64,000 nt of DNA from Mytilus edulis (lineage: Eukaryota), in assembly GCF_963676685.1 (NCBI RefSeq), contig NC_092354.1, positions 37,882,001 to 37,946,000 of the forward strand, in the 5' to 3' direction. Positions 860 through 55,175 of this stretch are shown here, piece after piece. Under the pieces are notes generated by a model. That model was not told the DNA's origin. It searched no databases and saw only the letters and a program-made list of their open reading frames with translations. Made by a program: the position numbers and the translations under genes. Positions within the stretch are counted from its first letter, which is position 1. Each line of letters begins with the position of its first letter.

Positions 860-1440
860 TCCCAACCTGGATTACCAAATCGCCCCACTTGTGAACTGTG
901 TTAAATCCCGTTAATATTACTCCTGCCAACTGGTCCCACCTAATGGAAATCGGTGAAATCTAGATAAATATATTATTAACCAGGATGAATTTAGTAATGC
1001 CAACTCGCCCCACTTATGGAAAAAGATGTTATCCCATTGAATATAAGTTCAATTCCTTATATTGCATTATGATACATTTAACAGGTTTCTTTTCAATTGT
1101 TATGCAAATAACTAAGCTTCAAAACTTACAGTTATTCTTCAACAATCAGTTTTTTTTTAGAATTATATATAATTTCAGTATATATCAATAATAGTCATTA
1201 AATTAATTTTCGGTTTGTTTGTATTCTGTGTAGATTAGTTTTCATTAAAGTGGTGCGAATTTTTATTTTTAATTATATATATATTAATCTTAATATTACT
1301 TTTTTTTTATAAGTAGGGCGAGTTGGCAGGAGTAAAATTAAACATGATTTAACCAATTTCACATGTGGGGCGATTTGATAAATCAGTTTGTGGCGGTTTT
1401 TTAAAAAGTGGGGCGATTAACCAGTGGGGCGACTTGTCCT
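860..1440. mobile_element. MITE-like element with long imperfect inverted repeats
   Basis: 860-939 (caaatcgccccac..ttactcctgccaact) is the reverse complement of 1312-1395 (agttggcaggagtaa..gtggggcgatttg). GTGGGGCGA motifs repeat to 1439. Confidence 0.6.
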
Positions 1441-4400
1441 GCTTCCATTTGAAGGCCCCCTTGAAGGTTTTGTATGACTATATGAACCATCATTCACGTA
1501 AAACCCCCATGTGCATTTTGAAAAGTTGTCAGATATGTTTCTAACTCCAGACAAAATCTACCGGTATGAATGAAAAAGAAGTTTTCAATTAACGCTCTGT
1601 GGCCATAACAGCTGTCTCATTAGCATTTTAACCACTTCCCATATTTGCAATTAAAACAATAGAAGAAAATTATTCAACGCAAAAACAAAACTTACTTGTA
1701 AATATGAAATTCTCTTTACAGTATGAGTTTTTCTCATTGCTTGAGATTGTACAGTAGTACCTTGCTTGATAAACTCACTAAATATCATATACATTGTACC
1801 ACATCTCCTTATTTTTATAAGCATTCCAATAACATGAACAATTGTAATTCAATTCTATATACCAAAGCAAAATGAACTGCACCACTTTCATTCACTAGTA
1901 TGCATCTTTTGGCAAAATACAAGTTCTTAAATGACACAATATATATTTATTGATAAAAAAATAAAATTTAGTATACAACTCTTTAACAGGTATAAAAAAA
2001 AGCACAGCTGTGTCATAACTTGTGAAATCTGTGCTGAAAACATAGACATTGCTGGTATTTGAGTAATTCCATATGTGAAGCTCAACATTAGCTCATCAGT
2101 TGGTGGTGGACAGTTATAGTTCCTTCCTGCAGGCTAGGATGAATGACTTTTCAGGAAAACCAATTTCACAAATCAAAACTTTCCTCTAGATTTCTCCTAC
2201 AATATTCATCCAGTTTAGTTCTTTTGTTTTAATTGGACACCGTCCTGATTTTTAATTTTGCAATACCATTCAGTTTCTTGCTTGCAAATGGTGCATGAAA
2301 ATAGGATGGGTATGGCAGTAGACAAGTCTCTTTAATGTGGGTTTGTGCCCTGAAAAAAAGTTTTACAACTTAAAGTTTTTTTTTGAAACTTGTGCAACAC
2401 ACATACCTAAATAACTATAACATAGAAGAGAGCATCATTCGTGTCAATGTTTCGTTCCTGTTTACATTGTCATTGATATTTTTTTCAGAAAGACTGAGGC
2501 ATAGCTAATGAATTCCTGTCATTACATCCTAAATTAATATAATTACTGCTAGAATAATTATCAGCATGATATACGTACACTATCATTGTACAGCCCAAGT
2601 CTTCAGTATATATAATTGTTGCATTCATTCACTCATGTGTTCAGTCGTTCAAAAATATTTAAACATCAACAAATGAACTTTAATAAGGACAAGAAAACAC
2701 TAGAAAAGATACGTACATACAACCCGTGTTTTATAAGTGTATTTGAAAGAGAAATATATCTGGTTAAACGATGTATAAAGGAGAAATATATCTGGTTAAA
2801 CGATGTATAAAGGAGGAAAAATTGTAGATATTGCATTACGATGCTTTCTACCTAATAGCACGTGGATATGTTTACATATTTAGACTTGACCCAGTATGAC
2901 CCGTACTTTGTAGGTCACCGCCGTCGTTTAAACACTAGACTACAGTCGTGTATAAGACAAGCCTATTTGTGTGAAGTAAATGTGTTTGTTCTGTACATTT
3001 AAATTGTTTTACCTGATAGCAAGGACGTATATCTATCCGTTTCCTTCTCAATTCACTTTGTCAAATTCTTTGAACTTCTTCAAAACATACGTATTACTGC
3101 GCCCGGAAGTGAGAAAAATATGAGAAATTCTCGTAAAATAATGCTATCTTCAATTTTGTGGAATCCATTTTGTTATATTTATTATACAAAGATAAAAAAA
3201 GTTACGATAAATTATGAATTTGCATATCATTATACGGAACGTTTATGAACTATTTTCCATAGCTGTATGTCGGTCATTTTGGCGGGAAATCATGTACACA
3301 TACACACGTAGATTGGCTGGTACCCGATCGTAATGTTACACATCAGATATATCAAATAGCTAATACCCGGAACGTAGTACCGGGAACCAGGATAATACGT
3401 AGACAACATACATAACTAATACCGAAATTGAAAACGCTTTACGGTTTCTCGTTCATAAACCGAATTCCGCTTTGAATTATAGAAGATGCAATATTAATCA
3501 TGTTCAGTCGACTTTTCATTGTTTTATCAACGTCTGAAAGAATCTTTAGATGTCAGATAACACTCGAAATTGACCCGACCTCTTTCCACACGGAATACAC
3601 ATAATGATAGTTTGTAGTCAGGTTGACTGCTTATAATGCAAAATACACACTAATAACAAGTTCTATAAAACGAACAATACACACTGATCGTTTCTTTAGT
3701 CCCCAATGTAAATGAAAGAATCAAAAACCATATCATACCATAAAAAGAAGAGGAGAAATTCGAACATTTCCGGACCTATTTCTGGCAAAAAGACCCCCTG
3801 CATAGATTGCGTATGAAAAGATGAACCTCATGACTTAAAAGTCAGGCCTTAAAGCACTGCCTTTAAAAATAAGGTTGAGTCCCCCATTACCAGTATGATT
3901 TTTTCCAACCAAAAAATGTCTGTCCCGCCTTTATTCTTAGGAAAAATGATTTCGCCCTGTCCCAGTTCGCACAGCAACATGATTACCCGCTGAACAGATT
4001 CAGAACACGGATTTGAGATAAAAATTCGAACACAAGAAGGAGTCCTGTCAAGAATTTTTTTGGAAAGTCAGGACATTCAGGTAAATTTTAGGAAAATATG
4101 CACAGAAACAATGCAACTTGAGAAATCAAAAATAAAAAATTTGGAAATTCTTCAGTTTTCACAGAATTTTGTTCTATGGATTTCGGAAACATGTCAAAAT
4201 TTCAGGTAATTTTCTAATTATCTTTAAAGATACTTGCATCTGAATTTAAATTTCAAAGAAATTAACATAAGCGGGGCGTTTTTTTTTTTGTTGGTTAGTA
4301 TATTTCATTTTTTCATCAAAAATCATGAGCTCTATGAATTAGATCACCAGATATATTGTGACTAGCAAAAGATTTTTAGAATAGGAAGTTTATGATATTT

Positions 4401-5389
4401 TATTTCTTTATTAAGTGCTGATGGACTAGAAATGATTTAGTCGATCCTATCCACAGAACACTTTTATCTTAAATATAAATAAGTAAAAAAAAACATAATA
4501 CTAGTATACATGTAAAAAATAATCAGTGACGCTATTCGGAAGTGTTCTACAATCCTGACAGGTTTGGTCAGTACTTACGCTAAGTTTTAAAACAGTTCTA
4601 CGGTTAGAACTGATTAAGTCAGTTTTGCTGACAATTCTATGACGGAAACTGATTTTGGACTTTTCTACCTAAAACTAATTCTGGCAGTTCTACCTAGGAA
4701 ACCAATGAAAATCGAGTTAACCACAAAGCCAGAAGTAAAACTGTTTTTAAAATGTTGATGGTAAATATTTTTAAAAAAAATTATCGTCAGTGTTATATGT
4801 CCATTTTGACAAGTCTCTTAAATTGTATACTAATTTTGTACAGTAAACTATGAAATCAAAGTGAGTCTAAGAATAGTATGTCCAAAGTGCTATCTTTGTT
4901 TCTATTACAGGAAGATAATTGGTACATTTGTAATATCCAAGCACTAATAGATGACAGACTTGACAATATGCGGAGCTTTTGGCATAAACTATTACCGAAC
5001 TAGACAGAGCATCTGATGAAAGTTATACTGCTCTATTCGTGGGAAATGTGTATAATCGCATTATTGATGTACTTAACATTATTCAGAAACCCCATCTATC
5101 ATGTTAAAACATGATATTTCACTGTTTTCGGACTATCCACACAGCTAAGTGATTGATGTATCTACGTCTCGTTTTAAAGAATCTCTTTTTGACAGTCAGA
5201 CAAAGATCATACTAGCCAAATTAGTAGGCAAATACTTAGCATGCTTACTCATTTATGTGCATATAACAATCGTAAAATAAGATATAATAAAACGTATTGC
5301 TCTTTCGGGAAAAACTGACGATGGAGGTTTCCAACTCTACAGACGAATTACAAAAAATGATCATGAACATTTGCAGAGGAATTATAGCA

Positions 5390-5560: not shown

Positions 5561-6463
5561 TCACGACATGGTCGTTAATTAATAGGCAGCTACTCTCAAA
5601 ATGAAGACAAAGTGATCATTTTCTAGGCTTTAAATTAGGAAGGAACAGAAACGTTTCAAATGCACAAAGATTATGTAAACAATGACAAATTTCATTTCTT
5701 TTTGCATTGTAACATTAACATATCATTGCGTTCTAATCTTTTTGCTTATCTAAAAGACTATACCATTATTTAAACATATTGATCCATTTAATAAACTTAA
5801 ACACATTCTAAGCCCCATCCCTGAACTTGTTTAACATATTGGGAGTCTTCATTAAGCAGTCTTTAGAAGTGAGGGAGTCGGAGAGTAGTTAAAGTTTGTA
5901 GTGGAAGAACATCATCTATAAAGCGGGAAGTAGAGTTAAAGGATATTACCAAATTCTTATTATTCTTCCTTAGAAGTCCCTAGAAGAAGTGACAATCCTT
6001 AACGTATTTGCCATAATCGTGTGAATATACCTTACATAACAATTATATTTTGCACGTCACATAGATTAAATTATAAATTTGTCGTTCATGGTATAAAGAG
6101 GTGCAATTATACACTTTCTTTTTTTATATATAATCCAACTTCTGTTTAGATAATATCACTTCTGTCATTCTTTGACCATCATCCCATCAGATGGCCTCTT
6201 TTGTATCAACCTATCTATTGTATTTATTGTGAACATGAAACCAGTCCAAGAAGATGCAAAGACAGGTCGACCACTATTAATTTTCATTAAATTTTGTTCA
6301 CAAGGTCAGCCTGCTAATAGTGTAGTGAATTGTGCACACAAGTACTGATCAGCTGATGTCCTCAATCTTTTATCCCGAAGGTTGACTTGGGAATTGAAGT
6401 ACGGGAACTCAAGTCCTTTCCAATTTATATTCGAATAATAAAATCAACGGTACCAATTTTGTT

Positions 6464-6507
6464 GCACCAGATGTGCATTTCGACAATACATGTCTCTTCA
6501 GTGATGC
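6464..6507 (-). ncRNA. Type I hammerhead ribozyme, copy 1 (one substitution in stem III)
   Basis: Minus strand GCAUCA-CUGAAGA-GACA(UGUAU)UGUC-GAAA-UGCACA-UC|UGGUGC. The palindrome AUGCGCAU is changed to AUGCACAU. Confidence 0.75.
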
Positions 6508-6813
6508 TCGTGGCCAAAATATTTGAAATCCAAAGCATATATAAAAGATGAAGAGCTATTATCCAAAAGGTCCAAAAAGTATAGCCAAATTCGTGAAAGG
6601 AATCAGAGCTTTGCATGAGGGAGATACATTCCTTAATTTATAATAATTTCTAATATTTTGTAACAGCAAATTTTAATAACACAAAAAATCCGTATTTTCA
6701 TGCCATTACCGAAGTACTGGCTACTGGGCTGGTGATACCCTCGGGGACTAATAGTCCACCAGCAGAGGCATCGACCCAGTGGTAGTAATAAAATCAACGG
6801 TACCAATTTTGTT

Positions 6814-6857
6814 GCACCAGATGCGCATTTCGACAATACATGTCTCTTCAGTGATGC
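6814..6857 (-). ncRNA. Type I hammerhead ribozyme, copy 2
   Basis: Minus strand: stem I GCAUCA/UGGUGC, core CUGAAGA, stem II GACA/UGUC, GAAA, short palindromic stem III AUGCGCAU, UC cleavage site. Confidence 0.85.
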
Positions 6858-7164
6858 TCGTGGCCAAAATATTTGAAATCCAAAGCATATATAAAAGATG
6901 AAGAGCTATTATCCAAAAGGTCCAAAAAGTATAGCCAAATTCGTGAAAGGAATCAGAGCTTTGCATGAAGGAGATACATTCCTTAATTTATAATAATTTC
7001 TAATATTTTGTAACAGCAAATTTTAATAACACAAAAAAATCCGTATTTTCATGCCATTACCGAAGTACTGGCTACTGGGCTGGTGATACCCTTGGGGACT
7101 AATAGTCCACCAGCAGAGGCATCGACCCAGTGGTAGTAATAAAATCAACGGTACCAATTTTGTT

Positions 7165-7208
7165 GCACCAGATGCGCATTTCGACAATACATGTCTCTTC
7201 AGTGATGC
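7165..7208 (-). ncRNA. Type I hammerhead ribozyme, copy 3
   Basis: Identical to copy 2. Confidence 0.85.
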
Positions 7209-7514
7209 TCGTGGCCAAAATATTTGAAATCCAAAGCATATATAAAAGATGAAGAGCTATTATCCAAAAGGTCCAAAAAGTATAGCCAAATTCGTGAAAG
7301 GAATCAGAGCTTTGCATGAGGGAGATACATTCCTTAATTTATAATAATTTCTAATATTTTGTGACAGCAAATTTTAATAACACAAAAAATCCGTATTTTC
7401 ATGCCATTACCGAAGTACTGGCTACTGGGCTGGTGATACCCTCGGGGACTAATAGTCCACCAGCAGAGGCATCGACCCAGTGGTAGTAATAAAATCAACG
7501 GTACCAATTTTGTT

Positions 7515-7558
7515 GCACCAGATGCGCATTTCGACAATACATGTCTCTTCAGTGATGC
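7515..7558 (-). ncRNA. Type I hammerhead ribozyme, copy 4
   Basis: Identical to copy 2. Predicted cleavage between 7521 and 7520. Confidence 0.85.
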
Positions 7559-7596
7559 TCGTGGCCAAAATATTTGAAATCCAAAGCATATATAAA

Positions 7597-10500
7597 TAAA
7601 GGCAACAGTAGTATACCGCTGTTCAAAACTCATAAATCCATGGACAAAAAACAAAATCGGGATAACAAACTAAAACCGAGGGAAACGCATTAAATATAAG
7701 AGGAGAACAACGACATAACACTAAAATGTAACACACATAGACAAAATACCACGAGAATAACAAATATAACATATATATATAACATCAAAACCAAATACAT
7801 GAATTTGGGATAGACAAGTACCGTGACACGTCTTATCGCAATGTGAATTTACACTCAAAAATAAGAGAAAACAAACGACACAACGTTATAATGTAATACA
7901 CACAGAAACGAACTATAAAATAACAATGACCATATTCCTGACTTGGTACAGGACATTTTTAAAGGAAAAAATGGTGGGTTGAACCTGGTTTTGTGGCATG
8001 CCAAACCTCGCACTTTTATGGCCATATGAAATATAACATCAAAATGACAACACAGGACTACAATATAAATAAATTGGAGAACACAATTGACAAAGAATCA
8101 CACGAACAACAGCCAACAAAAGGCAACAAGTTCAAAATTTTTATACGCCAGAAGTGTATTTTGTCCACACAAGACCTATGTGTGACGCACAGATACAAAA
8201 GTTTGAAAGCCGAAACGAGTACAAAGTTGAACAGCATCGAGGACCAAAAGATCAAAAAGGTAGTGCCAAAAACGGCAAGGGTTTTCTGTTAAGTTACCAG
8301 AAAATCCCTATAATTTAGAGTAATTTATACTTTTGCAAACAGTAAATTTAATAAAATGAATATACAAAAGATGTACATGATAAAGCTGAAGTATTAACTA
8401 ATTACAGGAAACAACTGAAATACATTTACATAACCAGACATTTGAAACACAAAAGTAGACACATCCGAATACGTTTAAACCTCTACGCCAAGTGACGTCC
8501 TATTTGAAACTGAAAAATGACGAAAAAATGACGTCATTTGAATTAGTAAAACAGAGCATCAAAAAACGAAAAATTACGTCACATAAGAATGAATAAGATA
8601 GAATTAGGATTAATATAAGATTATATATTTGAACTAAATACTGATATTGCATTTAATAACAAAGCACATTTTAATTCTTATTAATATAAAACTGAGGTAG
8701 CAATTAACTATATTATAAAACTATGTCAGGTTTGTTATGAATCTAACTTCAAACGTAAAATATCGTACTGATTACTTTGAACGAAATCAAATCTGATAAA
8801 TGAAGGCGGTGATTAATTTTCTTTACCATAACACATAAATATAATAGAAAAGACGTCAACATATTTGACAAAATCCGATGAGAATTACAAATATAACATT
8901 AAACATTTAAACTAAATACATGAATTTGGGATGGATAAGTACCGTACCACGTCTTATAGTAATGGGAGTTCACACTCGGCAAAACAGTCACAATCGGTAA
9001 TAAGTCACGTTTGGAAATTAAAAGATTAGACGACATTATGACAAAACACAATCTACCATGTGGTAAAAATGTCCTTAGCTAGTTTGGTCAACGAAACATC
9101 GTATGGATCCACCAAATCGTGATGGTGTCCATAAAATTTACGGAGTGTCAATTTTAATCTGTCCTCCTCATAACTTTGTTGGAGCAGTTTCTGCGTAAGG
9201 AGCACACTCCTGTATATGAAGTCCGTATAGTGTGAACAAGCACGAGAATAACGTATCAATTGTGATATGTAAACACCATACGAAGGGGCAGAGGGTATGT
9301 TACTGCTGAGAAATGGGAAATTGATATTTGGGAAGTTAAAATCGTCCCGTTTATCATAGATTTTCGTGTGAAGTCGTCCATCTACGTCAATATTGAGGAA
9401 AAGATCAAGGTATGAAGCAGTCCTTATAGTATCAGTGGTATCCTTAATTTCAAGTTCACTTGGATATATGAGATGTAAGTATTGGCTGAAATATGGGTTA
9501 TTCAATGACAGAACATCATCAATATATCGGAAAGTAAAATTAAAGAATTTCGCAAGGTGCTTTTTCTTTTTGTCTTTTAGAAGGTTCTGAATGAATTCTG
9601 TTTCATACGAGTACAAAAACAAATCAGCCAGCAGGGGTGCACAATTAGTACCCATTGGAATACCGACTGTCTGTTGAAATATAAATCCTCCAAACTCAAC
9701 AAATATATTGTCGATCAAAAAGTCCAGCATTTTGATATCATCTTCTGTATATTTTCTGGGAGATTCAGTGTGATTTTTCACAAAATATGAATTATTGTAA
9801 CCCAAAACAAGAAATTTGTATCTTCGATTTCCATTTTTATAGAAAAAGCTCTGTTTTATGAGATGGTGTAGTCGATCTTTCAACTGAGCATGGGGAATAG
9901 TAGTATATAGCGTAGAAAAATCAAAAGTTTTTATGTTGCTGCAAAATTGCAAAGATTGTGATTGAAGGTTAAGCAGTAGATCTTTCGAATTTTTGAGAAT
10001 CCACATCTGGTTAACACCACTGGTAGAATATATCTCCTCACAATATTTTTGAAGCCCATCTTTAACTGTCGAAAGAATAGTAGTCAGTACTTTAGAAAGA
10101 TGTTTGGTTGAACATTTTGAAGACCCAGCTATGTATCGTTCTTTATATGGAGTTTTGTGTAATTTGGGTATCCAGTATAATGAAGGCAAGTTTTCTTCGT
10201 TTTCTTTGATGTTGATACCAAAAGAAAGAAGGACAGATTTATGATTTTGTAAAATTTCGTCCTTGGTAAATGATGTTAAAGAATATGTAGGATTACCAGT
10301 AGTTTTATCAATTCCAAGCTCTGTAGTAAGACATTGCAAATAATGTTTTTTACATATGAAGACAATATTATTGGAGGCTTTATCTGCTGGAACAACGACA
10401 TATTTGTCATGCAAAGAGGATAAAGCATCCACAACCTCCGGATTCTTGAAAGGGTTAGAAACTTTAGTACTCATATTACATCGTAGTTTTTGTATGCGCC

Positions 10501-10813
10501 TCTGAATGCATGATCGAATAGCTTTGATCCATTCAGACAAAGTGTCCAGTTCTGGTTCGTCTGGTTCGCGCTTTACCCATTTTCTTGCATAGTCCTCAAC
10601 TGCATCCATCAGTAACTTGAAATTCTTTTTCCAGTTGATGGGCTGGGGGATTCTATATTTTGGTCCCTTGGCTAACAACTCTCTTAGTTGTTCATTGGTA
10701 ACGATGCCAAGGTCTCCAGTAATAATATGACCAGCTGGACTGTAATTGTATTGTGACGATGCACATGAGCAATCCGGAGGCTTGGATTTTGTATCTTTGA
10801 GGTTAAAAGCATG
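7597..10813 (-). mobile_element. 5'-truncated Penelope-like retroelement (Naiad-type) inserted in the retrozyme array
   Basis: RT ORF plus ~1.45 kb of 3' region ending ..GAACAGCGGTATACTACTGTTGCCTTTA. The array unit CCAAAGCATATATAAAAGATGAAGAG is split exactly around it. The same 3' end occurs alone at ~14219-14314 and ~29005-29312. Confidence 0.85.
9053..10813 (-). CDS. Penelope-like (Naiad-type) reverse transcriptase, N-terminally truncated, no GIY-YIG domain present
   Basis: Open frame of ~586 codons with PADKASNN, LYWIPKLHK, FDFSTLYTTIPH (A), GIPMGTNCAPLLADLFL (B'), FRYIDD (C) and YGVYISQLIRYSRAC thumb. N-terminal CxC..GHIITG linker. The ORF-track start at 10846 is a TTG inside the repeat unit. 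Confidence 0.92.
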   Translation of the reverse strand, partial: HAFNLKDTKSKPPDCSCASSQYNYSPAGHIITGDLGIVTNEQLRELLAKGPKYRIPQPINWKKNFKLLMDAVEDYARKWVKREPDEPELDTLSEWIKAIRSCIQRRIQKLRCNMSTKVSNPFKNPEVVDALSSLHDKYVVVPADKASNNIVFICKKHYLQCLTTELGIDKTTGNPTYSLTSFTKDEILQNHKSVLLSFGINIKENEENLPSLYWIPKLHKTPYKERYIAGSSKCSTKHLSKVLTTILSTVKDGLQKYCEEIYSTSGVNQMWILKNSKDLLLNLQSQSLQFCSNIKTFDFSTLYTTIPHAQLKDRLHHLIKQSFFYKNGNRRYKFLVLGYNNSYFVKNHTESPRKYTEDDIKMLDFLIDNIFVEFGGFIFQQTVGIPMGTNCAPLLADLFLYSYETEFIQNLLKDKKKKHLAKFFNFTFRYIDDVLSLNNPYFSQYLHLIYPSELEIKDTTDTIRTASYLDLFLNIDVDGRLHTKIYDKRDDFNFPNINFPFLSSNIPSAPSYGVYISQLIRYSRACSHYTDFIYRSVLLTQKLLQQSYEEDRLKLTLRKFYGHHHDLVDPYDVSLTKLAKDIFTTW

Positions 10814-11189
10814 AAAAGATGAAGAGCTATTATCCAAAAGGTCCAAAAAGTATAGCCAAATTCGTGAAAGGAATCAGAGCTTTGCATGAGGGAGATACAT
10901 TCCTTAATTTATAATAATTTCTAATATTTTGTAACAGCAAATTTTAATAACACAAAAATTCCGTATTTTCATGCCATTACCGAAGTACTGGCTACTGGGC
11001 TGGTGATGCCCTCGGGACTAATAGTCCACCAGCAGAGGCATCGACCCAGTGGTAGTAATAAAATCAACGGTACCAATTTTGTTGCACCAGATGCGCATTT
11101 CGACAATACATGTCTCTTCAGTGATGCTCGTGGCCAAAATATTTGAAATCCAAAGCATATATAAAAGATGAAGAGCTATTATCCAAAAG
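10814..11189 (-). repeat. Retrozyme-like tandem array (right part)
   Basis: Continues the unit from AAAAGATGAAGAG for slightly more than one unit. Confidence 0.9.
11084..11127 (-). ncRNA. Type I hammerhead ribozyme, copy 5 (upstream of RT)
   Basis: Identical core to copy 2. Predicted cleavage between 11090 and 11089. Confidence 0.85.
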
Positions 11190-11925
11190 TGTACCCCATA
11201 AAGAGACAAGTTGACTTATAAGGACTGTTTCTTCAATGTCACTCATACCGCATCTTTTACCCATTAAGTAAAGATATTCATTGTTTTCACAAATGAGAAT
11301 ATGCATAGCATCCTCAAAAAATTTGCAAATGGAGTTATTCATGTTAAATGATATTTGTAAGAACAAACTCCATATTAAAATAGATGGTCGCACTACTAAG
11401 CACAAGGTCACAAAAATACTAAGAACGAGAAAACTGCAGCTACATTACAAGTGTTTAAAATAATTATATATTGGTTTCTTTCGTGACATCATTCTGCCAA
11501 GAACGGGAATCAACGGCGGATTTCCGTATTGTTCATACGAAAAGATGGAACTCTCAGAAGCATATATAGGGACACCAATTTGAGAGAGTTTAGCTCTGTA
11601 TTACTCGTTTCATTTCCTTGATGTGCGTTTTCATTTTAATTGTAGAAGTGTATTTGCGATGTTAACATTCAACTTGTTATAAAAAAACTATCTAACGATT
11701 TTATCATTTTTAATAATCATTGCATATTGGTAAGGTACCAGAAACATCCTCGACACTGGCATCGTATAATCTTATTTTCTGTTGTTTTACATCCATTCTG
11801 AAATTTAAAAGTATCACATTTAGCACTATGTATCATTAAATGCATCACATCTTCTACAGCTCGTACAACACAAATTTGATGAAAAAGTAATAAAAAAGCA
11901 TGTTTTATATTACCTTGCATTTAAA

Positions 11926-12093
11926 GATTGATTGATTGTTGGTTGCTTAACGTCCAGTGGCAAATATTTCATGCATATTCAGGACGAGAACAAGTTCACA
12001 ATAAATACAATAGGTAGGTTGATACAATAGAGGCCATCTGGGATGCTGGTCGGAGAAATTTGGACTGCCACCGGAAAAAAGGAGGGTATATTG
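11926..12093 (-). mobile_element. SINE family A, 3' fragment
   Basis: (GATT)n tail followed by GTTGGTTGCTTAACGTCCAGTGGCAAATATTTCATGCAT, shared with the full copies. Confidence 0.85.
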
Positions 12094-12112
12094 GGTATAT
12101 TTTAAATTAATA

Positions 12113-12745: not shown

Positions 12746-13362
12746 GGTTTGCAGTAGTAAGACGAATGAATTCAAGTTCGTCTTCTTTCTTTTCCACGTT
12801 CCTTTATGGTGCTTGATGTTCTCAGTAATACATAGTTGGGAACCTTTCTTCCTAAGGACCGGTTTCATTATTGCGTCATTGCCTCAGCTGTTAAAATATT
12901 AAAATTGTGCATCTTGAACTGAAAATGATCGGTTAAATATTTTCGTCCTGTTTGGTAAATTCAGGTAATAAAATTGTTAGTTATAATAATTCAGAGGAAT
13001 CCCTTGAAAATGTATTTACAAAAAGTTACTAAAAGTAAGCCACATATTATTAAAGTCAAGGATATGGTTTGCACATTTAATTTGTTTCCATAGAGGACTG
13101 TACTCTACAAACTGGGAAAAAATTGTATCCCTCAACATTAATAGGGGTGTTATATCCCAAATGTGTTTCTGTCAATAGTATAATATCATAATGAATGATC
13201 TGTTTTAGAAATGAGGGGTCATGTAATTTATTGTAGGATTTAGAAATTAAGCCCCCAACATTCCAAACACACTTAAGATAATTTAGATAATAGAATACTC
13301 TTGTGCTTATTCATTACTTCAATTAAATGTTTAAGAAATAGTGTTGTTAAAGTGTGTACTAA

Positions 13363-13784
13363 TTGATTGATTGTTGGTTGCTAAACGTCCAGTGGCAAAT
13401 ATTTCATGCATATTCAGGAAGAAAACAAGTTCACAATAATTACAATAGGTAGGTTGATACAATAGAGGCCATCTGGAATGATGGTCGGGGAAATTTGAAC
13501 TGCCACTGGATGAGGGTATATTGGATAGGGACTGACAGTTTGCCTTGAAACAGGCCACCTACGGACCCCTCAATAAGTTGTTGCAAGGGTTCTTAACGTG
13601 CAAAGAGCGTGGCACTCTCTTCACACGAGGCATCGGATTTAACGTCCCCCTTCTGACCGGACGTGACTGCGAACTTGATACATCCCGCACAGCCAAACGG
13701 ACGCCCCACTTCGGCAAGCGTTTTACTGCCGGTCGGGATAAGACCAAGTGACCATATTTCTATACCCCAGTCACCCTTGGGGGG
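13363..13784 (-). mobile_element. SINE family A, full length
   Basis: ~420 bp. 12-bp TSD AAAGTGTGTACT at 13349-13360 and 13785-13796. Confidence 0.9.
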
Positions 13785-14218: not shown

Positions 14219-14314
14219 GAATGCGTTTCCCTCGGTTTTAGTTTGTTACCCCGATTTTGTTTTTTGTTCATGGATTTATGAGTTTTGAACAGCGGTATAC
14301 TACTGTTGCCTTTA
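14219..14314 (+). mobile_element. Solo 3' end of the Penelope-like element
   Basis: Reverse complement of ~7597-7690. Confidence 0.8.
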
Positions 14315-15296
14315 TCTAGACACAAAGCCCTTACATAAGAGTACAAACAATGAATATTCAGATGAACGTTTATCATTAAAATCATCAACATTATAAAATA
14401 GTCATTTTATTGCTCTCTTCATTGATATTTGTTTTAGTTTTGAGTATTAGTAGGTCAGACATCTCAATTTTCATGGTCATCATTCAACAGATCAATACTA
14501 AACAGAAAACTTTAATTAAGGTTGATATTTTTCTCCATAGTGCGACTTTTTTTTATTAATTTGAAACGGAACGTTTTTTTCCAAAATTTATTAGAAAAGG
14601 GAAATTTCAACATAATGAATATATGCAAAAAAGAGTCATATCATCACAATCATTGATGCACAAGAACTTGATCATATAAATGCAACAATGTAAATAATGT
14701 AATTATCAAATGAAAAAAGGAACGAATGAAAAAAAATATAAGAATTTGGTTGTCCAATTAAACTTGCTTAATCTTCTAATTTGAATCGCTCCATCCAATA
14801 AAGATGTACGGAGGAAGATCTTTGAAGAACAGAGTGAAAAAATGTTTTGTATAAGAATTGCAGAAATGTTCTAGTGGATGACTTGACATTTATATAGTGG
14901 ACTGAATAATTGTACTGAGCAAGTCGTAAAAAAAGAAAACAAAAACTTTAACAGAAATTGTTTATATTATAAATTTGCGAATATAAGCATACTGCTATCT
15001 ATGTACACCACAAAGGTATACAATTCAATTGTTTGCATATACAAGTATTAGAATGAAACTATAACTTTATATTTTTCATAATAGAATAAACAAAACAAGT
15101 TTTTCATTTATTTAGACATTTCATCATTTTGTTTCAGTGAAAGGACTTTACTCTTTTACTGTAAATATTATTATACTTTCCAAAATGAGAATACTCTTTG
15201 TTGTCATATAAATGAACAAGAAATAATCGTAACAGGATGCTGTTACGAAGTCTCCCAAACAAAGCTCCCGTTACTCGCCAATCATATGGTTCCATA

Positions 15297-15798: not shown

Positions 15799-16128
15799 TT
15801 CGCAGTTCATCGCATCGTTCGGTCAGATTGGGGACGTTAAATCCGATGCCTCGTGTAAAGAGAGTGCCACGCTCTTTGAACGTTCAGAACCCTTGCAACA
15901 ACTCTTTGTGGGGTCCGTAGGTGGCCTTGTTGCAAGACAAAATTTCTGTCCCTATCCAGTATACCTTTATTTTCCAGTGGCAGTCCAAATTTCCCCGAAC
16001 ATCTTCCTAGATGACCTCTATTATTTCAAGACCTACTTATAGTATTTATTGTGAACTTGTTCTCGTCCTGAATATGCATGAAAAATTTGCCACTGGACGT
16101 AAAGCAACAAACAATCAATCAATCAATC
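15799..16128 (+). mobile_element. SINE family A, 5'-truncated
   Basis: Central domain and (CAAT)n tail match the full copies. Confidence 0.85.
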
Positions 16129-16129
16129 T

Positions 16130-17240
16130 AGATATAGTTCCTTCGACCATGTTTTTTAAGTCATCCAATTCTCTTTTTAATCTCTGCATCTCCCTATCAC
16201 CTTGTGTTTGTTCTTGCTGTTTTCTTTGTCTTGTTCGTTCTTTTTCTGATTCTTTCTTGACATCTTTCATTTTTGTTTTACTTTCCCGTACTGGTTCATT
16301 ACTTGCTCTACTGTATTTTTCTGCCCATTCTTTTGTTAACTGTCTAATCCTCTTGTTGAGTTTTACTTTTGTCCTGGAACTGTCTTTGTTTCGGCTTTGT
16401 GTCTCTTCTGTTGTTTCTTGCCAAATTGTGTGTAATTATTCTGTGGCACTATCTACATATATCTATGATTCAGTTGTTATGAATTCCCTATATGATCTTC
16501 TTATTTCTGTGATGAATTGTTTTATTTTTTCGCTGAATAAAGTTTTTGCCTCGTCCTGGCCAAATATTGCTGTAAAGGATGCATCCTTTAGAGCTGCATA
16601 TACTGGCAGTTCATCATTTTGAAATCTTCTTGAAAGTTTCTAACACACCCCAAGGGTGACTGGGGTATATACATATGGTAACTTGGTCTTGTCCCGACCG
16701 GCAATTAAACGCTTGCCGAAGTTGGGCGTCCGTTTGGCTATGCGGAATGTATCAAGTTCGCAGTCACGTCCGGTCAGAAGGGGGACCTTAAATCCGATGC
16801 CTCGTTTAAAGAGAGTGCCACGCTCTTTGCACGTTAAGAACCCTTGCAACAACTCTTCGAGGGGTCCGTAGGTGGCCTGTTGCAAGGCAAAATTGATGTC
16901 CCTATCCAATATACCCTCATTTTCTAGTGGCAGTCCAAATTTCCCCGACAATCATCCCTTATGGCCTATATTGTATTTATTGTGAACATGTTCTCGTCCA
17001 GAATATGCATGAAATATTTGTCACTAGACGTTAAGCAACCAACAATCAATCAATAAGTCTCTAACTAGGGTTGATATGTGATGCCTTTTAGATAACAAGT
17101 TATGAATTTTTTCCACACAGCTAACAATAAGTGTTTCACCTTCATTATCCCAGCTATCCATGTCAAAGTTAATGGGTATTACAGTTATAATTGGAGGTTG
17201 TGCACTTGAAATATCTTTAAATGCTTTGGCCATTTCTGAA
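16130..17240 (-). pseudogene. Decayed ORF with charged coiled-coil region, interrupted by a SINE
   Basis: Removing SINE 16648-17054 joins ..KIHNLLSKRHHISTLVR to KLSRRFQNDELPVYAALKD..MQRLKRELDDLKNMVEG. Two in-frame stops. Confidence 0.5.
16648..17054 (+). mobile_element. SINE family A, near full length
   Basis: Flanked by AAGTTTCTAAC and AAGTCTCTAAC (11-bp TSD, one mismatch). Confidence 0.88.
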
Positions 17241-28675: not shown

Positions 28676-29004
28676 AAACTGTTACCACATATTCTTCTGA
28701 CGACATCGATATTTCATTTCTAAGTACTCCCTTTTCCGAATCCAATGATATATAATTTATTAGAATTTTTTTTACCAAGAGCATATATTCTGAAGGTGAT
28801 ATCTGCATAAAACTTTTTTTAAGGAGGGGGCAACATGTTCTGATCGATGATGGGAACCGGACAAATTAGTGGATAATCGACTTACTTTTTCTGTGAGCAG
28901 AAACATCAAACTAAAATCTGTCAAAATGTATGGCAGTCCGAGTGAATGGTTTATTCACTGTCTCTCTACGAACATAACGGGGATCTTATCCAGAATTGCA
29001 AAAT

Positions 29005-29312
29005 TAAGGCAACAGTAGTATACCGCTGTTCAAAATTCATAAATACATGGACAAAAAACAAAATCGGGGTAACAAACTAAAACCGAGGGAAACGCATTAA
29101 ATATAAGAGGAGAACAACGACACAACACCGAAACGGACCAAGCAACAGACTAAACACCACGAGAATAACAAATATAACATCAAAACCAAATATATGAATT
29201 AGGGATAGACAAGTACCGTGCCACGTCTTATCTCAAAAATAAGAGAAAACACAAACGACTCAACGTTAAAATGCAACACACACACAGAAACGAACAATAT
29301 TATAACAATGGC
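29005..29312 (-). mobile_element. Solo 3' portion of the Penelope-like element, inserted in another repeat
   Basis: Matches 7597-~7930 with internal deletions. Its flanks (28850-28975 and 29335-29400) are near-contiguous in a paralogous copy at 42185-42390. Confidence 0.8.
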
Positions 29313-30955: not shown

Positions 30956-33295
30956 GACCATTAGCCATTGCTAGATTCTAATCCAAAACCACAACATGTC
31001 GAAATTCTTTCTACGAAAAAGCTATGCAGAAGCTGTAAGATGAGTATCAGAAGAAAAGGATCAGGCGAAAAATGAGCAAAACTAAATACAGCTGTACATG
31101 TCAGCCCGAGTTGGACACTTGGTAATATGCAGGCACCAGCTGCAACTTTTGTAGTGGTAGGAATGAAGCTGTTCGAGGATCAGCATCTAACAGCTATAAA
31201 AGGGGCAACAGTTTTGTTGCTGACTGGTAATGACCAGAAGAAGGTCACATTGTTTAGACCCCAAATTAAGAAGTTATTTGAGTCAAGAGGATTAGACTCT
31301 AAAATTGAATGGGACAAAACCAAAATGCTTATTTAATTCATGGATGTTATTCCGATTGAGGTAGACTACAGTTTAAGGAACAACACAGTTTCCAAACTTG
31401 TGTGTAAGCGCACATGTCAGTAACTTTCATATTGTATTTTGTTACTTGAAGGGACACACCATTATAATGAATATTATTTCCTGGTTGTATTTTATCAATT
31501 AATTAATTAATATTTTGTTTAAAAGGTACAACAGTTAATTTTTCAATGCAATTTTACAATAATCCTAACTGTTTATTGATTATAAGAGAATTATTGCATC
31601 CATACAAAGTTGATTTATATTAACTTAAATTAAAATTATTTTAGTTAGTTTGGATGCAAAACTGAGAAATTATCATAGATGTTTTATAGTTGAGAATCAA
31701 GTTTTAATTATGAACCTAGAACTAAAATCCTAGTATAAAATTATATTCCAAATTATAAATATTTCTTTTCTTAAAATTGAATGTTAAAGATAAGTGATGC
31801 AATAAATTTCATTTTTCACTTGATTCCTATGAAACATCAAAGATTCTTTCTATGCTAGTGTCTGTGTTTCAAAAGTAAGCAGCTCATGTTTATCGCATAC
31901 GAGGTGCACAAAACTATCATCTCTATACCTTAAATGTGACTTTCCGGGGATGTGGGTGCGGAAACCCGCATTCATACAAAAAGTGCTATGCGTTTCTGGA
32001 ACAATTGTGGACGCACGAAACCAAGAACTTCAGCTCCACGGTTGTAAGGGTAAGTTGTGAATGTGAGAGAGGATGCGTTTCTGAGTGCTCCTGATAAAAA
32101 GATTATCTGTTATTGCCATTTCTTTACTCTACAGGTTTACTGCTGTGAAATCAGTGTTTTGTTCTTTTATTATGTCTATACTATTTAATGGCAATAAATA
32201 ATCAAGTGAAAATAATTCAGAAAATGAAAGTTTTTAATTGGATTAATCGGATGAAGTGTGCCAGACTTTTTACAAATATCCCCACAGGAGAACAGTGTAA
32301 CAATTTATGTAGTACGACATATGCTACAATATGTACAAAGAATATTGATTAGAGATCTTAACTCTATAAAAGTCTTTTTCAGTTTGGAAATATATACATA
32401 TATAGGAGAGTAAATTTACTTGATAAATTTAATAGTATCATTTTATATAGCTTTCAGTACTTTAATTTTTTTATGTTCACGATATAAGATTTTGCATGTG
32501 TAGATTTTAGTATCAGTAGTTCTAAAGAGTAATACATTGTAATTTATTGTTTATTGACCACTGCTAAAAGACATTAAGAATTCTAATATAAATACATTCT
32601 GTCTAATTTAGAATTTGTATTTGATAATTAAACGATCAGAGGTTTGGTGCATAAGTAAAATTTAGAATATTGAATAATAAGCTGAAAATTCAGTTAATTT
32701 GATTAAAGAGTTTAGTTTGATAATTTGGGATCACTAGAGAATAGCATTTGTCATATAAACATCTATTGCTGGAATTTGATATTATTGTGAATCTGTCTTA
32801 TATGAAATAAGTCGTATGCTTAATAAACAGTTATAATTAAATAATGGATTACCTGGATAAATATGAGAGTTAGCTATAGTGAACCAAGGCAGTACCCCCG
32901 TCTCATAGCTTCTTAGTAATGGTAGAAAAAACGTTGCTATACACAACTGTCAATAACTTAGTAACGTTGACATTATATGTAAGTACTGGTACAATAAATG
33001 TTCAAGGTCGCAACATTTATACCTGGATTGACACTTTTGTTGAAACATGTGAATCCCTTGAAAAATAAATCATTTCATCCCAACCAAGATCATGCACACC
33101 AGTTGAATTTTAAATAAGAAATGTTCAACAGTTCCCTTGAATTTTAACATCCCTTCAGTCATGGTCTATTGACTTTGAACTTTTTTCATATCTTACATGT
33201 TAAAGTTTCTGATCAGTCAGTTTAAGGGGAACCATTAATAGTTGGCCAATGATATTTTTGTGCAGCTGTATAAGCAATGGCTCATTTCCATAGAG

Positions 33296-33547
33296 ATTGA
33301 TTGATTGATTGTTGGTTGATTAACGTCCAGTGGCAAATATTTCATGCATATTCAGGACGAGAACAAGTTCACAAACAATACAATAGGTAGGCTGATACAA
33401 TAGAGGCCATCTAGGTCGGAGAAATTTGGACTGCCACCGGAAAAGGAGGGTATAAAGGATAGGGACAGAAATTTTGCCTTGCAACAGGCCACCTACGGAC
33501 CCCTCAGAGAGTTGTTGCAAGGGTTCTTAACGTGCAAAGAGCGTGGC
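33296..33547 (-). mobile_element. SINE family A, 5'-truncated
   Basis: 15-bp TSD CATTTCCATAGAGAT at 33283-33297 and 33548-33562. Confidence 0.9.
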
Positions 33548-39551: not shown

Positions 39552-39600
39552 GAACGAAACGCGCGTCTGGCGTACTAAATTATAATCCTGGTACCTTTGA
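39552..39600 (+). repeat. 3' half of a hammerhead-containing repeat (second retrozyme family)
   Basis: ACGAAACGCGCGTCTGGCGTACTAAATTATAATCCTGGTACCTTTGA is homologous to 53888-53932. The CUGAUGA half is missing. Confidence 0.7.
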
Positions 39601-40028
39601 TTGATTGATTGATTGTTGGTTGCTTAACGTCCAGTGGCAAATATTTCATGCATATTCAGGTCGAGAACAAGTTCACAATAAATACAATAGGTAGGTTGAT
39701 ATAATAGAGGCCATCTGGGATGATGGTCGGGAAAATTTGGACTGCCACTGGAAAATAAGGGTATATTGGATAGGGACAGAATTTTGCCTTGCAACAGGCC
39801 ACCTACGGACCCCTCAAAGAGTTGTTGCAAGGGTTCTTAACGTGCAAAGAGCGTGGCACTCTCTTTACACAAGGCATCGGATTTAACGTCCCCCTTCTGA
39901 CCGGACGTGACTGCGAATTTGATACATCCCGCACAGCCAAACGGACGCCCCACTTCGGCAAGCGTTTTACTGCCGGTCGGGAGAAGACCAAGTGACCATA
40001 TTTCTATTCCCCAGTCACCCTTGGGGAT
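39601..40028 (-). mobile_element. SINE family A, full length
   Basis: 12-bp TSD TGGTACCTTTGA at 39589-39600 and 40029-40040. Confidence 0.92.
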
Positions 40029-49438: not shown

Positions 49439-49853
49439 CCACCAAGGGTGACTGGGGTATAGAAATATGGTCACTTGGTCTTCTCCCGACCGGCAGTAAA
49501 ACGCTTGCCGAAGTGGGGCGTCCGTTTGGCTGTGCGGGATGTATCAAGTTCGCAGTCCCGTCCGGTCAGAAGGGGGACGTTAAATCCGATGCCTCGTGTA
49601 AAGAGAGCGCCACGCTCTTTGCACGTTAAGAACCCTTGCAACAACTCTTTTGAGGGGTCCGTAGGTGGCCTGCTGCAAGGCAAAATCTTTGTCCCTTTCC
49701 AACATATCCTCCTTTTCCGGTGGCAGTCCAAATTTCTCCGACCATCATCCCAGTTAGGTCATCCTATTGTATTTATTGTGAACTTGTTCTCGTCCTGAAT
49801 ATGCATGAAATATTTGCCACTGGACGTTAAGCAACCAACAATCAATCAATCAA
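49439..49853 (+). mobile_element. SINE family A, full length
   Basis: 13-bp TSD TCTACGGAAATTA at 49426-49438 and 49854-49866. Confidence 0.92.
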
Positions 49854-50039
49854 TCTACGGAAATTAGGGAGAATATGCTTCCTACTCAGGCTTTTTGCGG
49901 GATTTTCATAAACTCAAAACGGAAGAAGTGCTAAACATCATCTCTCAACTGGTAGACAACATGCATTATAATGTGGTGTTCGTCTTGGGGAAAGACTATT
50001 TCCCTTGAAAGGACCCGACCTGGACTTTATATATTAGAT

Positions 50040-50241
50040 TAATCAATTAATTATTGGTTGCTTAACGTCCAGTGGCAAATATTTCATGCATATTCAGGAC
50101 GAGAACAAGTTCACAATAAATACAATAGGTAGGTTGATACAATAGAGGCCATCTGGGATGATGGTCGGTGCAATTTGGACTGCCACCGAAAAAGGAGGGT
50201 ATATTGGATAGGGACAGAAATTTTGCCTTACAACAGGCCAC
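50040..50241 (-). mobile_element. SINE family A, 5'-truncated
   Basis: The 3' ~200 bp matches the full copies. Confidence 0.85.
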
Positions 50242-54529: not shown

Positions 54530-55175
54530 ATTAAACATTCAACATTCAACAATCGTTTTCAATATGCAACATTCGTTATCAACATTATGATTTCCACTTT
54601 CAACAATCGTTTTCAACATTCTACATTCAAAATCCGTTTTTTACATTCCATATTTAATTTTCAACATTCGTTTTAAACATTCAACAATCGTTTTCAACTT
54701 TCAACATTGGTTTTCAACATTCAACATTCGTTTTCTTCATTCGATTTTCACAACATTCAACATTTGTTATTAACTTTTATCATTCGTATTCAACATTCAG
54801 CATTCTTTTTCAACATGACATTTTCGTGTTCAACCTGAAATATTCGTATTCAACATCCAGCATTCATTTTCAACATGAAATATTCGTTTTCAACACGAAA
54901 TATTCGTTTTCAACATGAAATATTCGTTTTCAACATGAAATATTCGTTTTCAACATGATATATTCGTTTTCAACATGAAATATGAAATATTCGTTTCCAA
55001 CGTTCAACATTCGAATGCACTATTCAACATTCAATTTTTATATTTTTTGTTCTAACCTTTTTTTCAACTTCTGAATATTCATCTTTCGTTTTCAACATTG
55101 TGATTTCATATTTCAACATAAATTTTCGACATTCAACATTCATGTTTTACTTTTAAAATACGTTTTTAACATTCG
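54530..55175. repeat. TTTTCAACA-based minisatellite including a 20-bp array
   Basis: TATTCGTTTTCAACATGAAA-like unit about 7 times at 54841-54990, within a degenerate (TTCAACA)n tract. Confidence 0.85.

What the first reader, a model, noticed from the sequence alone, without database searches (positions are those of the whole stretch)
6436..11189. Reverse transcriptase captured inside a hammerhead-ribozyme tandem array: candidate RT-encoding retrozyme
Seen: about 4.4 near-identical 350-bp units, with five minus-strand type I hammerheads. One unit is split at TATATAAA|AGATG by a 3.2-kb, same-orientation element whose RT frame is open with all catalytic motifs intact. The predicted cleavage sites at 11090/11089 and 7521/7520 would release a 3,569-nt RNA made of one retrozyme unit plus RT. 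Established: animal non-LTR retrozymes are non-coding tandem hammerhead repeats that yield circular RNAs and are thought to borrow Penelope-like RTs; units of this size have been reported in Mytilus. Inference: here the passenger RNA and its presumed mobilising enzyme form one self-cleaving, potentially circularisable unit. Caveats: the endonuclease is missing, the first in-frame ATG is about 80 codons in, and the element's 3' end also occurs alone in this window, so a chance nested insertion is plausible.
Basis: partly seen in the sequence, partly recalled or inferred. Interest (0 to 1): 0.9.

Follow-up and report, generated by a model that had tools for sequence, protein, structure and literature searches.

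The report
Truncated Naiad retroelement nested in retrozyme array
A dead-on-arrival, front-truncated copy of a very common mussel jumping gene (a Naiad-type Penelope-like element) has landed inside a young tandem array of self-cleaving hammerhead repeats; the combination exists only here and is an ordinary nested insertion, although the repeat and the jumping gene turn out to share their end sequences and are probably parasite and host.

Summary
There are 4.4 units of a 350-bp repeat and five minus-strand type I hammerheads. One unit is split cleanly by a 3.2-kb same-strand element with an open RT frame.

The interpretation does not hold. The insert is the last 3,214 bp of a 4,555-bp Naiad-type Penelope-like element. 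That element has at least 6,092 identical 3' ends in this 1.37-Gb mussel-type genome. Its copies are 98-99% alike and cut off at varied 5' points. The missing endonuclease and start codon lie in the 1,332 bp that this copy lacks.

Both junctions are unique in the genome. About ten such nested hits are expected by chance. The whole 4,750-bp block is absent from an empty-site allele in two other data sets. So nothing shows that the chimera moved as a unit.

The window does show that the retrozyme unit is homologous to this Naiad. They share a 3' terminus and a 58-nt 5' hairpin with five compensatory pairs. The Naiad 3' UTR also holds a dead hammerhead copy. Twelve independent arrays end at that terminus. 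The retrozyme is therefore probably a hammerhead-bearing mini-Naiad mobilised by Naiad enzymes. This scan noted the same link earlier on other DNA of this genome.

The parts
6437..7596 (-). Retrozyme array, 3' block. It holds 3.3 units of 350/351 bp and ends at the family's fixed 3' terminus (...GTTGATTTTATT).
   Evidence: TRF; unit comparison, 2-4 differences between units; empty-site joint 6436|11187.
7515..7558 (-). Type I hammerhead, predicted cleavage at 7521|7520. Equivalent copies have their core at 7165-7202, 6814-6851 and 6464-6501. The last one carries a G-to-A change in helix III.
   Evidence: Pattern search, 5 hits against 0 expected; fold; dimer cofold -30.3 kcal/mol against 2 x -9.3, with an 8-bp intermolecular helix III.
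11084..11127 (-). Fifth hammerhead, in the 5' block. Predicted cleavage at 11090|11089.
10814..11186 (-). Retrozyme array, 5' block. It holds a 5'-truncated first unit plus the front part of the split unit.
   Evidence: boundary from the empty-site joint.
10811..10813 (-). Three extra bases (CAT on the minus strand) at the 5' junction. They belong neither to the repeat nor to the Naiad.
   Evidence: Comparison with full-length copies and with intact units.
7597..10810 (-). 5'-truncated Naiad-type Penelope-like element, matching positions 1333-4555 of a 4,555-bp full-length element. TTTA at 7596-7593 could be element end or target.
   Evidence: Genome search, copies at 98-99% identity; variable 5' ends with a common 3' end.
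9053..10810 (-). Open RT frame equal to residues 419-1004 of the 1,004-aa Naiad protein. It carries the CxC, GxKY, DKA and YIDD motifs. It has no GIY-YIG domain and no native start codon.
   Evidence: motif definitions from PMC8557442.
8127..8391 (-). Dead, diverged retrozyme-like unit inside the Naiad 3' UTR. The hammerhead core is mutated (CUGAAGA to CACAUAG, GAAA to AAAA) while helices I and II can still pair.
   Evidence: About 62% identity over about 270 nt; local score 42 against 13.6 +/- 1.6 in shuffles.
7424..7481 (-). 58-nt hairpin at the start of each retrozyme unit. It repeats at 350-nt steps and also at about 10994-11050. It is homologous to the first segment of full-length Naiads (L003:178-235).
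   Evidence: Alignment; identical predicted fold in both, with z -2.3 and -2.7.

Best explanation
This is an ordinary nested retrotransposon insertion, made in two steps.

Step 1. A young array of the Mytilus-type 350-nt hammerhead retrozyme was inserted at this site. The first unit is 5'-truncated and the array ends at the family's fixed 3' terminus.

Step 2. A copy of a very abundant, currently active Naiad-type Penelope-like element then integrated into one unit by target-primed reverse transcription. The site is the TTTTATATAT stretch of that unit. Reverse transcription stopped 1,332 nt short of the 5' end. The copy therefore arrived without its 5' hairpin, its start codon and its N-terminal GIY-YIG endonuclease.

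Shown:
- the anatomy
- the family membership
- the truncation
- the uniqueness of both junctions
- an allele that lacks the whole block

Inferred: the order of the two events.

Also inferred, at about 0.75: the retrozyme is itself an internally deleted, hammerhead-bearing derivative of a Naiad. On this reading, its transcript is cut by the hammerheads, probably acting as dimers, and is circularised. Naiad reverse transcriptase then recognises the shared 58-nt hairpin and 3' terminus. It copies the RNA round and round into arrays.

Flanking hammerheads could in principle excise a 3,569-nt RNA from this locus. Nothing indicates that this RNA is made, circularised, translated or mobile.
For: Family and truncation:
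- In one search, 5,524 first-look candidates were found. The 39 scored copies elsewhere are 97-99% identical to the window's RT part.
- Upstream flanks of other copies are homologous to each other and stop at many different points. The points are 194, 304, 627, 687, 887, 1106, 1133, 1244, 1266, 1298, 1382 and more. All copies end at ...CTGTTGCCTTTATTTA.
- A natural full-length copy has a 1,004-aa ORF with an N-terminal GIY-YIG domain (PF01541, E 1.4e-4) followed by the RT.
- Full-length copies lie head to tail with a 4,555-bp period, as in L003/L004.

Uniqueness:
- The 5' junction 24-mer occurs once in 1.37 Gb at up to 2 mismatches.
- The 32-nt 3' junction occurs once at up to 3 mismatches.
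- The only other exact 23-mer match, on C5, is not in a retrozyme.

Chance expectation:
- There are 6,470 hammerhead units, about 0.165% of the genome.
- There are at least 6,092 Naiad 3' ends.
- Together these predict about 10 nested hits by chance.

Insertion anatomy and polymorphism:
- The split is precise and in phase, with a 0-3 bp duplication.
- An empty-site joint 6436|11187 appears in contigs of two runs from two organism labels and in 3 RNA reads.

Partnership between retrozyme and Naiad:
- Unit against Naiad tail plus 5' UTR is 73-82% identical, E 1e-8. The local score is 39 against 10.2 +/- 1.5 in shuffles.
- The hairpin fold is identical in both. It has 5 two-sided compensatory changes.
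- All independent arrays whose 3' end lay within the fetched DNA stop at the homologous terminus, with variable 5' starts.
- Hammerhead-less mini-Naiad arrays of 279 and 150 bp have the same architecture.
Against: - No array-only allele was seen, so the two-step order is inferred. Such an allele would look like any other array and could not be recognised in these data.
- The junctions were not found in independent reads. The runs laid carry the empty allele.
- Rfam does not call the hammerhead.
- TATA after the Naiad end is only modestly enriched: 183 of 6,092, or 3.0%. My rough composition estimate is about 1.3%. Target preference alone therefore explains little.
- The shared module is only 73-82% identical, so the true autonomous partner may be a closer Naiad relative than this family.
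Confidence: 0.88

Rival explanations
1. One-event origin. During a single target-primed reverse transcription, the enzyme copied 3.3 retrozyme units, jumped to the 3' end of a Naiad RNA, copied 3.2 kb, and jumped back to retrozyme RNA. Array and RT would then have been laid down together.
For: The only alternative allele seen lacks the whole 4,750-bp block. Both RNAs carry the terminus that Naiad enzymes appear to use. Three non-templated bases sit at the 5' junction, as can happen at template jumps.
Against: The enzyme would have had to return to the retrozyme template within 0-3 nt of where it left. The split unit is in phase, which a plain insertion gives for free. The split unit shows 8-10 differences from its neighbours, which differ by 2-4 from each other. 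About four of those 8-10 are boundary bases, so this does not decide. No other such composite was found among 29 Naiad copies and 12 arrays.
Confidence: 0.06
2. Functional RT-encoding retrozyme. The 3,569-nt hammerhead-bounded RNA is produced, circularised and supplies RT for itself or for the 350-nt circles.
For: Intact hammerheads flank the insert on the same strand. The RT frame is open and 99% identical to relatives. Retrozyme-family RNA of hammerhead polarity is present in RNA runs.
Against: The junctions are unique. The copy lacks its start codon, endonuclease and 5' hairpin. There are 108 elements with an intact 5' end that could supply enzyme. The block is absent from other individuals. 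No listed junction-spanning RNA read was found, though the runs come from non-carriers and so cannot test this.
Confidence: 0.04
3. Assembly artefact. Two abundant repeats were joined wrongly.
For: Both families are highly repeated. The junctions were not recovered in the independent runs laid.
Against: The split is base-precise and in phase, with the element's canonical 3' end and a typical 5' truncation. A mis-join would not reproduce that.
Confidence: 0.02

Closest known systems
Non-LTR retrozymes of Mytilus galloprovincialis (Cervera and de la Pena 2020, PMC7229834)
   Same: Repeats of 350-390 bp in tandem, type I hammerhead, low GC and thousands of copies. I count 6,470 here; the paper reports about 5,000. 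RNA of hammerhead polarity is present.
   Different: Nothing essential differs, so this is that family or a close relative. The paper proposes Penelope-like elements as mobilisers only from co-occurrence. Here the unit shows direct sequence homology to a Naiad's ends. I could not compare with the published sequences, because the supplement text held has none.
Naiad clade of Penelope-like elements (Craig et al. 2021, PMC8557442)
   Same: N-terminal GIY-YIG, Zn-finger-like linker, CxC, GxKY, DKA, frequent 5' truncation, partial head-to-tail tandems, very high copy number in bivalves and no canonical hammerhead.
   Different: At 4,555 bp it is slightly above the stated 3.4-4.4 kb. Its 3' UTR contains a decayed hammerhead-bearing unit homologous to the retrozyme, which the paper's descriptors would not report. 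The window's copy is a truncated fragment.
Canonical Penelope-like elements with hammerheads in their pseudo-LTRs, and the vertebrate retrozyme/pLTR relation (preprint 10.64898/2026.07.22.740005)
   Same: A small hammerhead tandem repeat related in sequence to the terminal non-coding part of an autonomous Penelope-like element.
   Different: That work covers Neptune/Poseidon-type elements in Xenopus. Here the autonomous relative is a Naiad, a clade described as lacking hammerheads.
SINE/LINE pairs that share a 3' tail
   Same: A short non-coding element carries the terminus that the autonomous element's enzyme uses. Both show a fixed 3' end and variable 5' truncation.
   Different: Here a 5' hairpin is also shared. 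Insertions are multimeric arrays, and the RNA carries a self-cleaving ribozyme.

Membership tests
Metazoan non-LTR retrozyme | Type I hammerhead with canonical catalytic core | tested here: met
   All core positions are present in five copies and helices I and II fold. Rfam models give no hit, probably because helix III is only 2 bp.
Metazoan non-LTR retrozyme | Short head-to-tail repeats (about 170-400 bp), low GC, non-coding | tested here: met
   350-bp period at 99% identity; GC 38%; no ORF above 106 aa.
Metazoan non-LTR retrozyme | Self-cleavage and accumulation as circular RNA | not testable with these tools
   RNA reads of hammerhead polarity exist, but circularity and cleavage cannot be read from them. 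No pile of read ends was seen at the cleavage sites.
Naiad Penelope-like element | N-terminal GIY-YIG endonuclease before the RT, with a Zn-finger-like linker and two Cys in the core | tested here: met
   Met in full-length relatives: PF01541 at residues 135-223, RT after residue 700. The window's copy lacks it through truncation.
Naiad Penelope-like element | Diagnostic CxC, GxKF/Y and DKA motifs | tested here: met
   PPDCSC, GPKY and PADKA were read in the window's frame.
Naiad Penelope-like element | 5' truncation and partial tandems | tested here: met
   tandem L004/L003 with a 4,555-bp period.
Naiad Penelope-like element | Preference for (TA)n targets | tested here: inconclusive
   TATA follows 183 of 6,092 ends, or 3.0%. 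This is only about twice my rough composition estimate.
Naiad Penelope-like element | No canonical hammerhead | tested here: met
   The only hammerhead-like stretch, in 8127-8391, has a mutated core.
Autonomous RT-encoding retrozyme (hypothetical) | The chimera is present at more than one locus | tested here: not met
   Both junctions are unique.
Autonomous RT-encoding retrozyme (hypothetical) | Complete coding capacity with start codon and integration function | tested here: not met
   It lacks residues 1-418, including the ATG and the endonuclease.
Autonomous RT-encoding retrozyme (hypothetical) | Transcript spanning repeat and RT | tested here: inconclusive
   None is listed. However, the RNA runs come from animals that show the empty allele.

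The most novel reading that the evidence does not exclude
In carriers of this allele, the two flanking hammerheads release the 3,569-nt RNA. It is ligated into a circle and translated from an internal AUG into an endonuclease-less Naiad RT. This would be a natural circular RNA that encodes the polymerase of its own retrozyme family.
Probability: 0.03. Interest if true: 0.8.

Novelty: new member of a known kind. Interest (0 to 1): 0.33.

Why it matters
As submitted, an RT captured by a ribozyme array, the finding is ordinary. It is one of roughly ten chance nestings expected between two very abundant, active repeat families.

The window's real value is that it puts the two families side by side. 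The mussel hammerhead retrozyme shares its 3' terminus with a Naiad element. It also shares a covarying 5' hairpin and most of its remaining length.

Naiads are a clade published as lacking hammerheads. This gives sequence-level support to the long-standing guess that Penelope-like enzymes mobilise animal retrozymes. It also suggests that Naiads once carried a working hammerhead. Within the papers I could search, this link is not reported for Naiads or for mussels. Other notes of this scan had already seen it on other DNA of the same genome.

Tried and rejected
- Rfam found no hammerhead or any other ribozyme, at gathering threshold over the whole window and at E<=10 over 6000-11600. I kept the hammerhead call on manual core and helix inspection plus the pattern statistics.
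- The monomer hammerhead fold is no more stable than shuffles, z +0.37. Only the dimer form is clearly favoured.
- The circular 350-nt unit folds at -75.6 kcal/mol against -71.3 +/- 5.2 for shuffles, so there is no evidence for a rod-like circle.
- The exact 23-mer 3' junction match on C5 is a truncated Naiad next to TATATGC, not a retrozyme.
- A retrozyme array and a Naiad copy lie 7 kb apart on C11 at 33.35 Mb and are unlinked.
- The supplement of PMC7229834 holds no hammerhead sequence to compare.
- The RNA reads could not test for a chimeric transcript:
  - Loose ends at 7592-7595 are heterogeneous, with agreement 0.4-0.66. They come from other tail copies.
  - The animals sequenced show the empty allele.
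- I did not use the large protein searches, structure prediction or the complex test. The family assignment did not need them.
A natural copy (L003) served only as a coordinate reference. The two halves of the split repeat unit were joined inside one script only to count differences, and were not printed.
Full report
**What is there.** Window 6437-11186 is a block on the minus strand with three parts.
- A 5'-truncated first retrozyme unit plus the front of a second unit lie at 11186-10814.
- A 3.2-kb insert lies at 10810-7597.
- The rest of that second unit plus three more units lie at 7596-6437.

Tandem Repeats Finder reports a 350-bp period at 99% identity. A hammerhead pattern hits five times, only on the minus strand, with none expected by chance. 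Read directly, the motif has every canonical core base. It has a 6-bp helix I, a 4-bp helix II and a very short helix III inside the palindrome AUGCGCAU.

The monomer fold is unremarkable. Two copies cofold into a double hammerhead with an 8-bp helix III, at -30.3 kcal/mol against 2 x -9.3. This is how short-helix-III hammerheads of newts and Penelope-like elements are thought to work (established knowledge). Rfam finds nothing. The predicted cleavage sites and the 3,569-nt product are arithmetically correct.

**What the insert is.** A search of the window's own genome gave 5,524 first-look candidates. That genome is 1.37 Gb and shows at least 14 large contigs in the hit lists. The 39 scored copies elsewhere are 97-99% identical to the RT part.

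In 29 fetched copies, the whole 3,214 bp recurs with the same 3' end. Their upstream flanks are homologous to each other but break off at many different points. Eight copies continue through a further 1,332 bp and abut the 3' end of a preceding copy. This gives head-to-tail elements with a 4,555-bp period, as in L004/L003.

A natural full-length copy has one 1,004-aa frame. It carries an N-terminal GIY-YIG domain (PF01541). It also carries the diagnostic Naiad motifs listed by Craig et al. 2021:
- a Cys-rich linker
- two Cys inside the GIY-YIG core
- CxC
- GxKY
- DKA in place of DKG
- YIDD

The window's frame equals residues 419-1004 and is 582/586 identical. The missing endonuclease and the late first ATG are therefore simply 5' truncation, the commonest fate of such insertions. 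The genome holds 6,092 exact copies of the 25-nt 3' end. It holds only 108 copies of the 5' UTR/ATG segment.

**Did the chimera move?** It did not, as far as this genome shows.
- The 5' junction is unique at up to 2 mismatches.
- A 32-nt 3' junction is unique at up to 3 mismatches.
This is only because it is mostly element end plus TA-rich flank. Its one other exact match is not in a retrozyme.
- None of 29 other Naiad copies is flanked by the repeat. None of 12 other arrays has a Naiad within 1.5 kb.

With 6,470 hammerhead units, about 0.165% of the genome, and at least 6,092 Naiad ends, roughly ten nested insertions are expected by chance. The split of the unit is base-precise and in phase, with three extra bases at the 5' junction and a 0-3 bp duplication. 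The site is the TTTTATATAT stretch of the unit. TATA follows 3.0% of Naiad ends, which is a modest bias at best.

**Polymorphism.** I laid two RNA runs and two contig sets on 6300-11300. A joint 6436|11187 skips the whole 4,750 bp. It appears in contigs of two runs with different organism labels and in three RNA reads.

The block is therefore a recent insertion, absent from those animals. For the same reason those RNA runs cannot test for a chimeric transcript. Retrozyme-family RNA is present, mostly with the first mate on the plus strand. In usual stranded libraries that means minus-strand RNA of hammerhead polarity. No pile of read ends marks the cleavage sites.

**The link between the two families.** The retrozyme unit aligns with the Naiad tandem junction. 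This covers the last roughly 20 nt of the element and the first roughly 85 nt of the next copy, up to and including the ATG. Identity is 73-82%, E 1e-8.

Both versions fold into the same 58-nt hairpin. By my count from that output, five pairs of the two outer stems changed on both sides while the inner part is conserved.

The rest of the unit, hammerhead included, aligns at about 62% with 8127-8391 in the Naiad 3' UTR. There the catalytic core is mutated. Both similarities far exceed shuffles: 42 against 13.6 +/- 1.6, and 39 against 10.2 +/- 1.5.

Independent arrays across the genome all end at ...GTTGATTTTATT(A). This is the homologue of the Naiad terminus, 36 nt downstream of the cleavage site. 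They start at arbitrary unit positions.

The same Naiad family has also spawned hammerhead-less mini-elements in arrays with the same architecture:
- 279-bp units made of positions 1-213 plus 4478-4555
- 150-bp units made of positions 1-107 plus 4515-4555

I infer that the retrozyme is a hammerhead-bearing mini-Naiad. I also infer that array formation and the fixed 3' end are properties of Naiad-type reverse transcription, not of the ribozyme.

**Literature and earlier notes.**
- Mussel retrozymes are published, including circular RNA and in vitro cleavage (PMC7229834).
- Naiads are published as abundant in bivalves and as lacking canonical hammerheads (PMC8557442).
- A 2026 preprint relates vertebrate retrozymes to pseudo-LTRs of other Penelope-like clades.

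I found no paper linking Naiads to mussel retrozymes.

Earlier notes of this scan on the same genome had already described three of these features. They are the shared 58-nt hairpin, the dead unit at 8135-8400 and a common 3' boundary. I reached the same points independently before reading those notes. I re-tested them here.

**Verdict.** The RT-encoding retrozyme reading is not supported. The locus is a nested, dead-on-arrival Naiad insertion in a polymorphic retrozyme array. Interest in the locus itself is low. The partnership evidence is of moderate interest but is not new to this scan.

Noticed in passing
window 6436|11187: An empty-site allele lacking the whole 4,750-bp block is present in contigs of two runs with different organism labels and in three RNA reads. 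The array is therefore a recent insertion polymorphism, and the flanks are transcribed at a low level.
   Followed up: partly
L064 (G000:C2:95560600-95565000) and L065 (G000:C7:27806300-27809900): Hammerhead-less mini-Naiad tandem arrays. One has 279-bp units (Naiad positions 1-213 joined to 4478-4555) in at least 11 copies. The other has 150-bp units (1-107 joined to 4515-4555). The first unit is 5'-truncated and the array ends at the Naiad 3' terminus.
   Followed up: partly
window 8867-8977 and 7740-7856: The Naiad 3' UTR contains an internal direct repeat at 81% identity. It also holds an internal pseudo-terminus (TTTTGAAC..GTTGCCTTTT, about 8105-8127) resembling its real 3' end. The 1.45-kb UTR looks built from stacked tails.
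   Followed up: partly
window 29001-29251 (direct) and 14220-14318 (inverted): Tail-only copies of the same Naiad 3' end at 93-97% identity. They are most simply extreme 5' truncations.
   Followed up: no
window 11919-12108, 13354-13543, 33292-33481, 39596-39785, 50034-50223, with inverted partners at 16031-16130 and 49763-49860: A dispersed 100-280-bp repeat family present in both orientations, SINE- or MITE-like. It is unrelated to the finding.
   Followed up: no
window 54635-55010 and 34-472: A 20-bp tandem repeat (about 18 units) and a 146-bp tandem repeat (3 units).
   Followed up: no
L036 raw 625-887 (G000:C6, beside the array at 65838453-65840194): A sequence 68% identical to the retrozyme-like part of the Naiad 3' UTR lies next to a retrozyme array on the opposite strand. 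It is possibly another related family.
   Followed up: no
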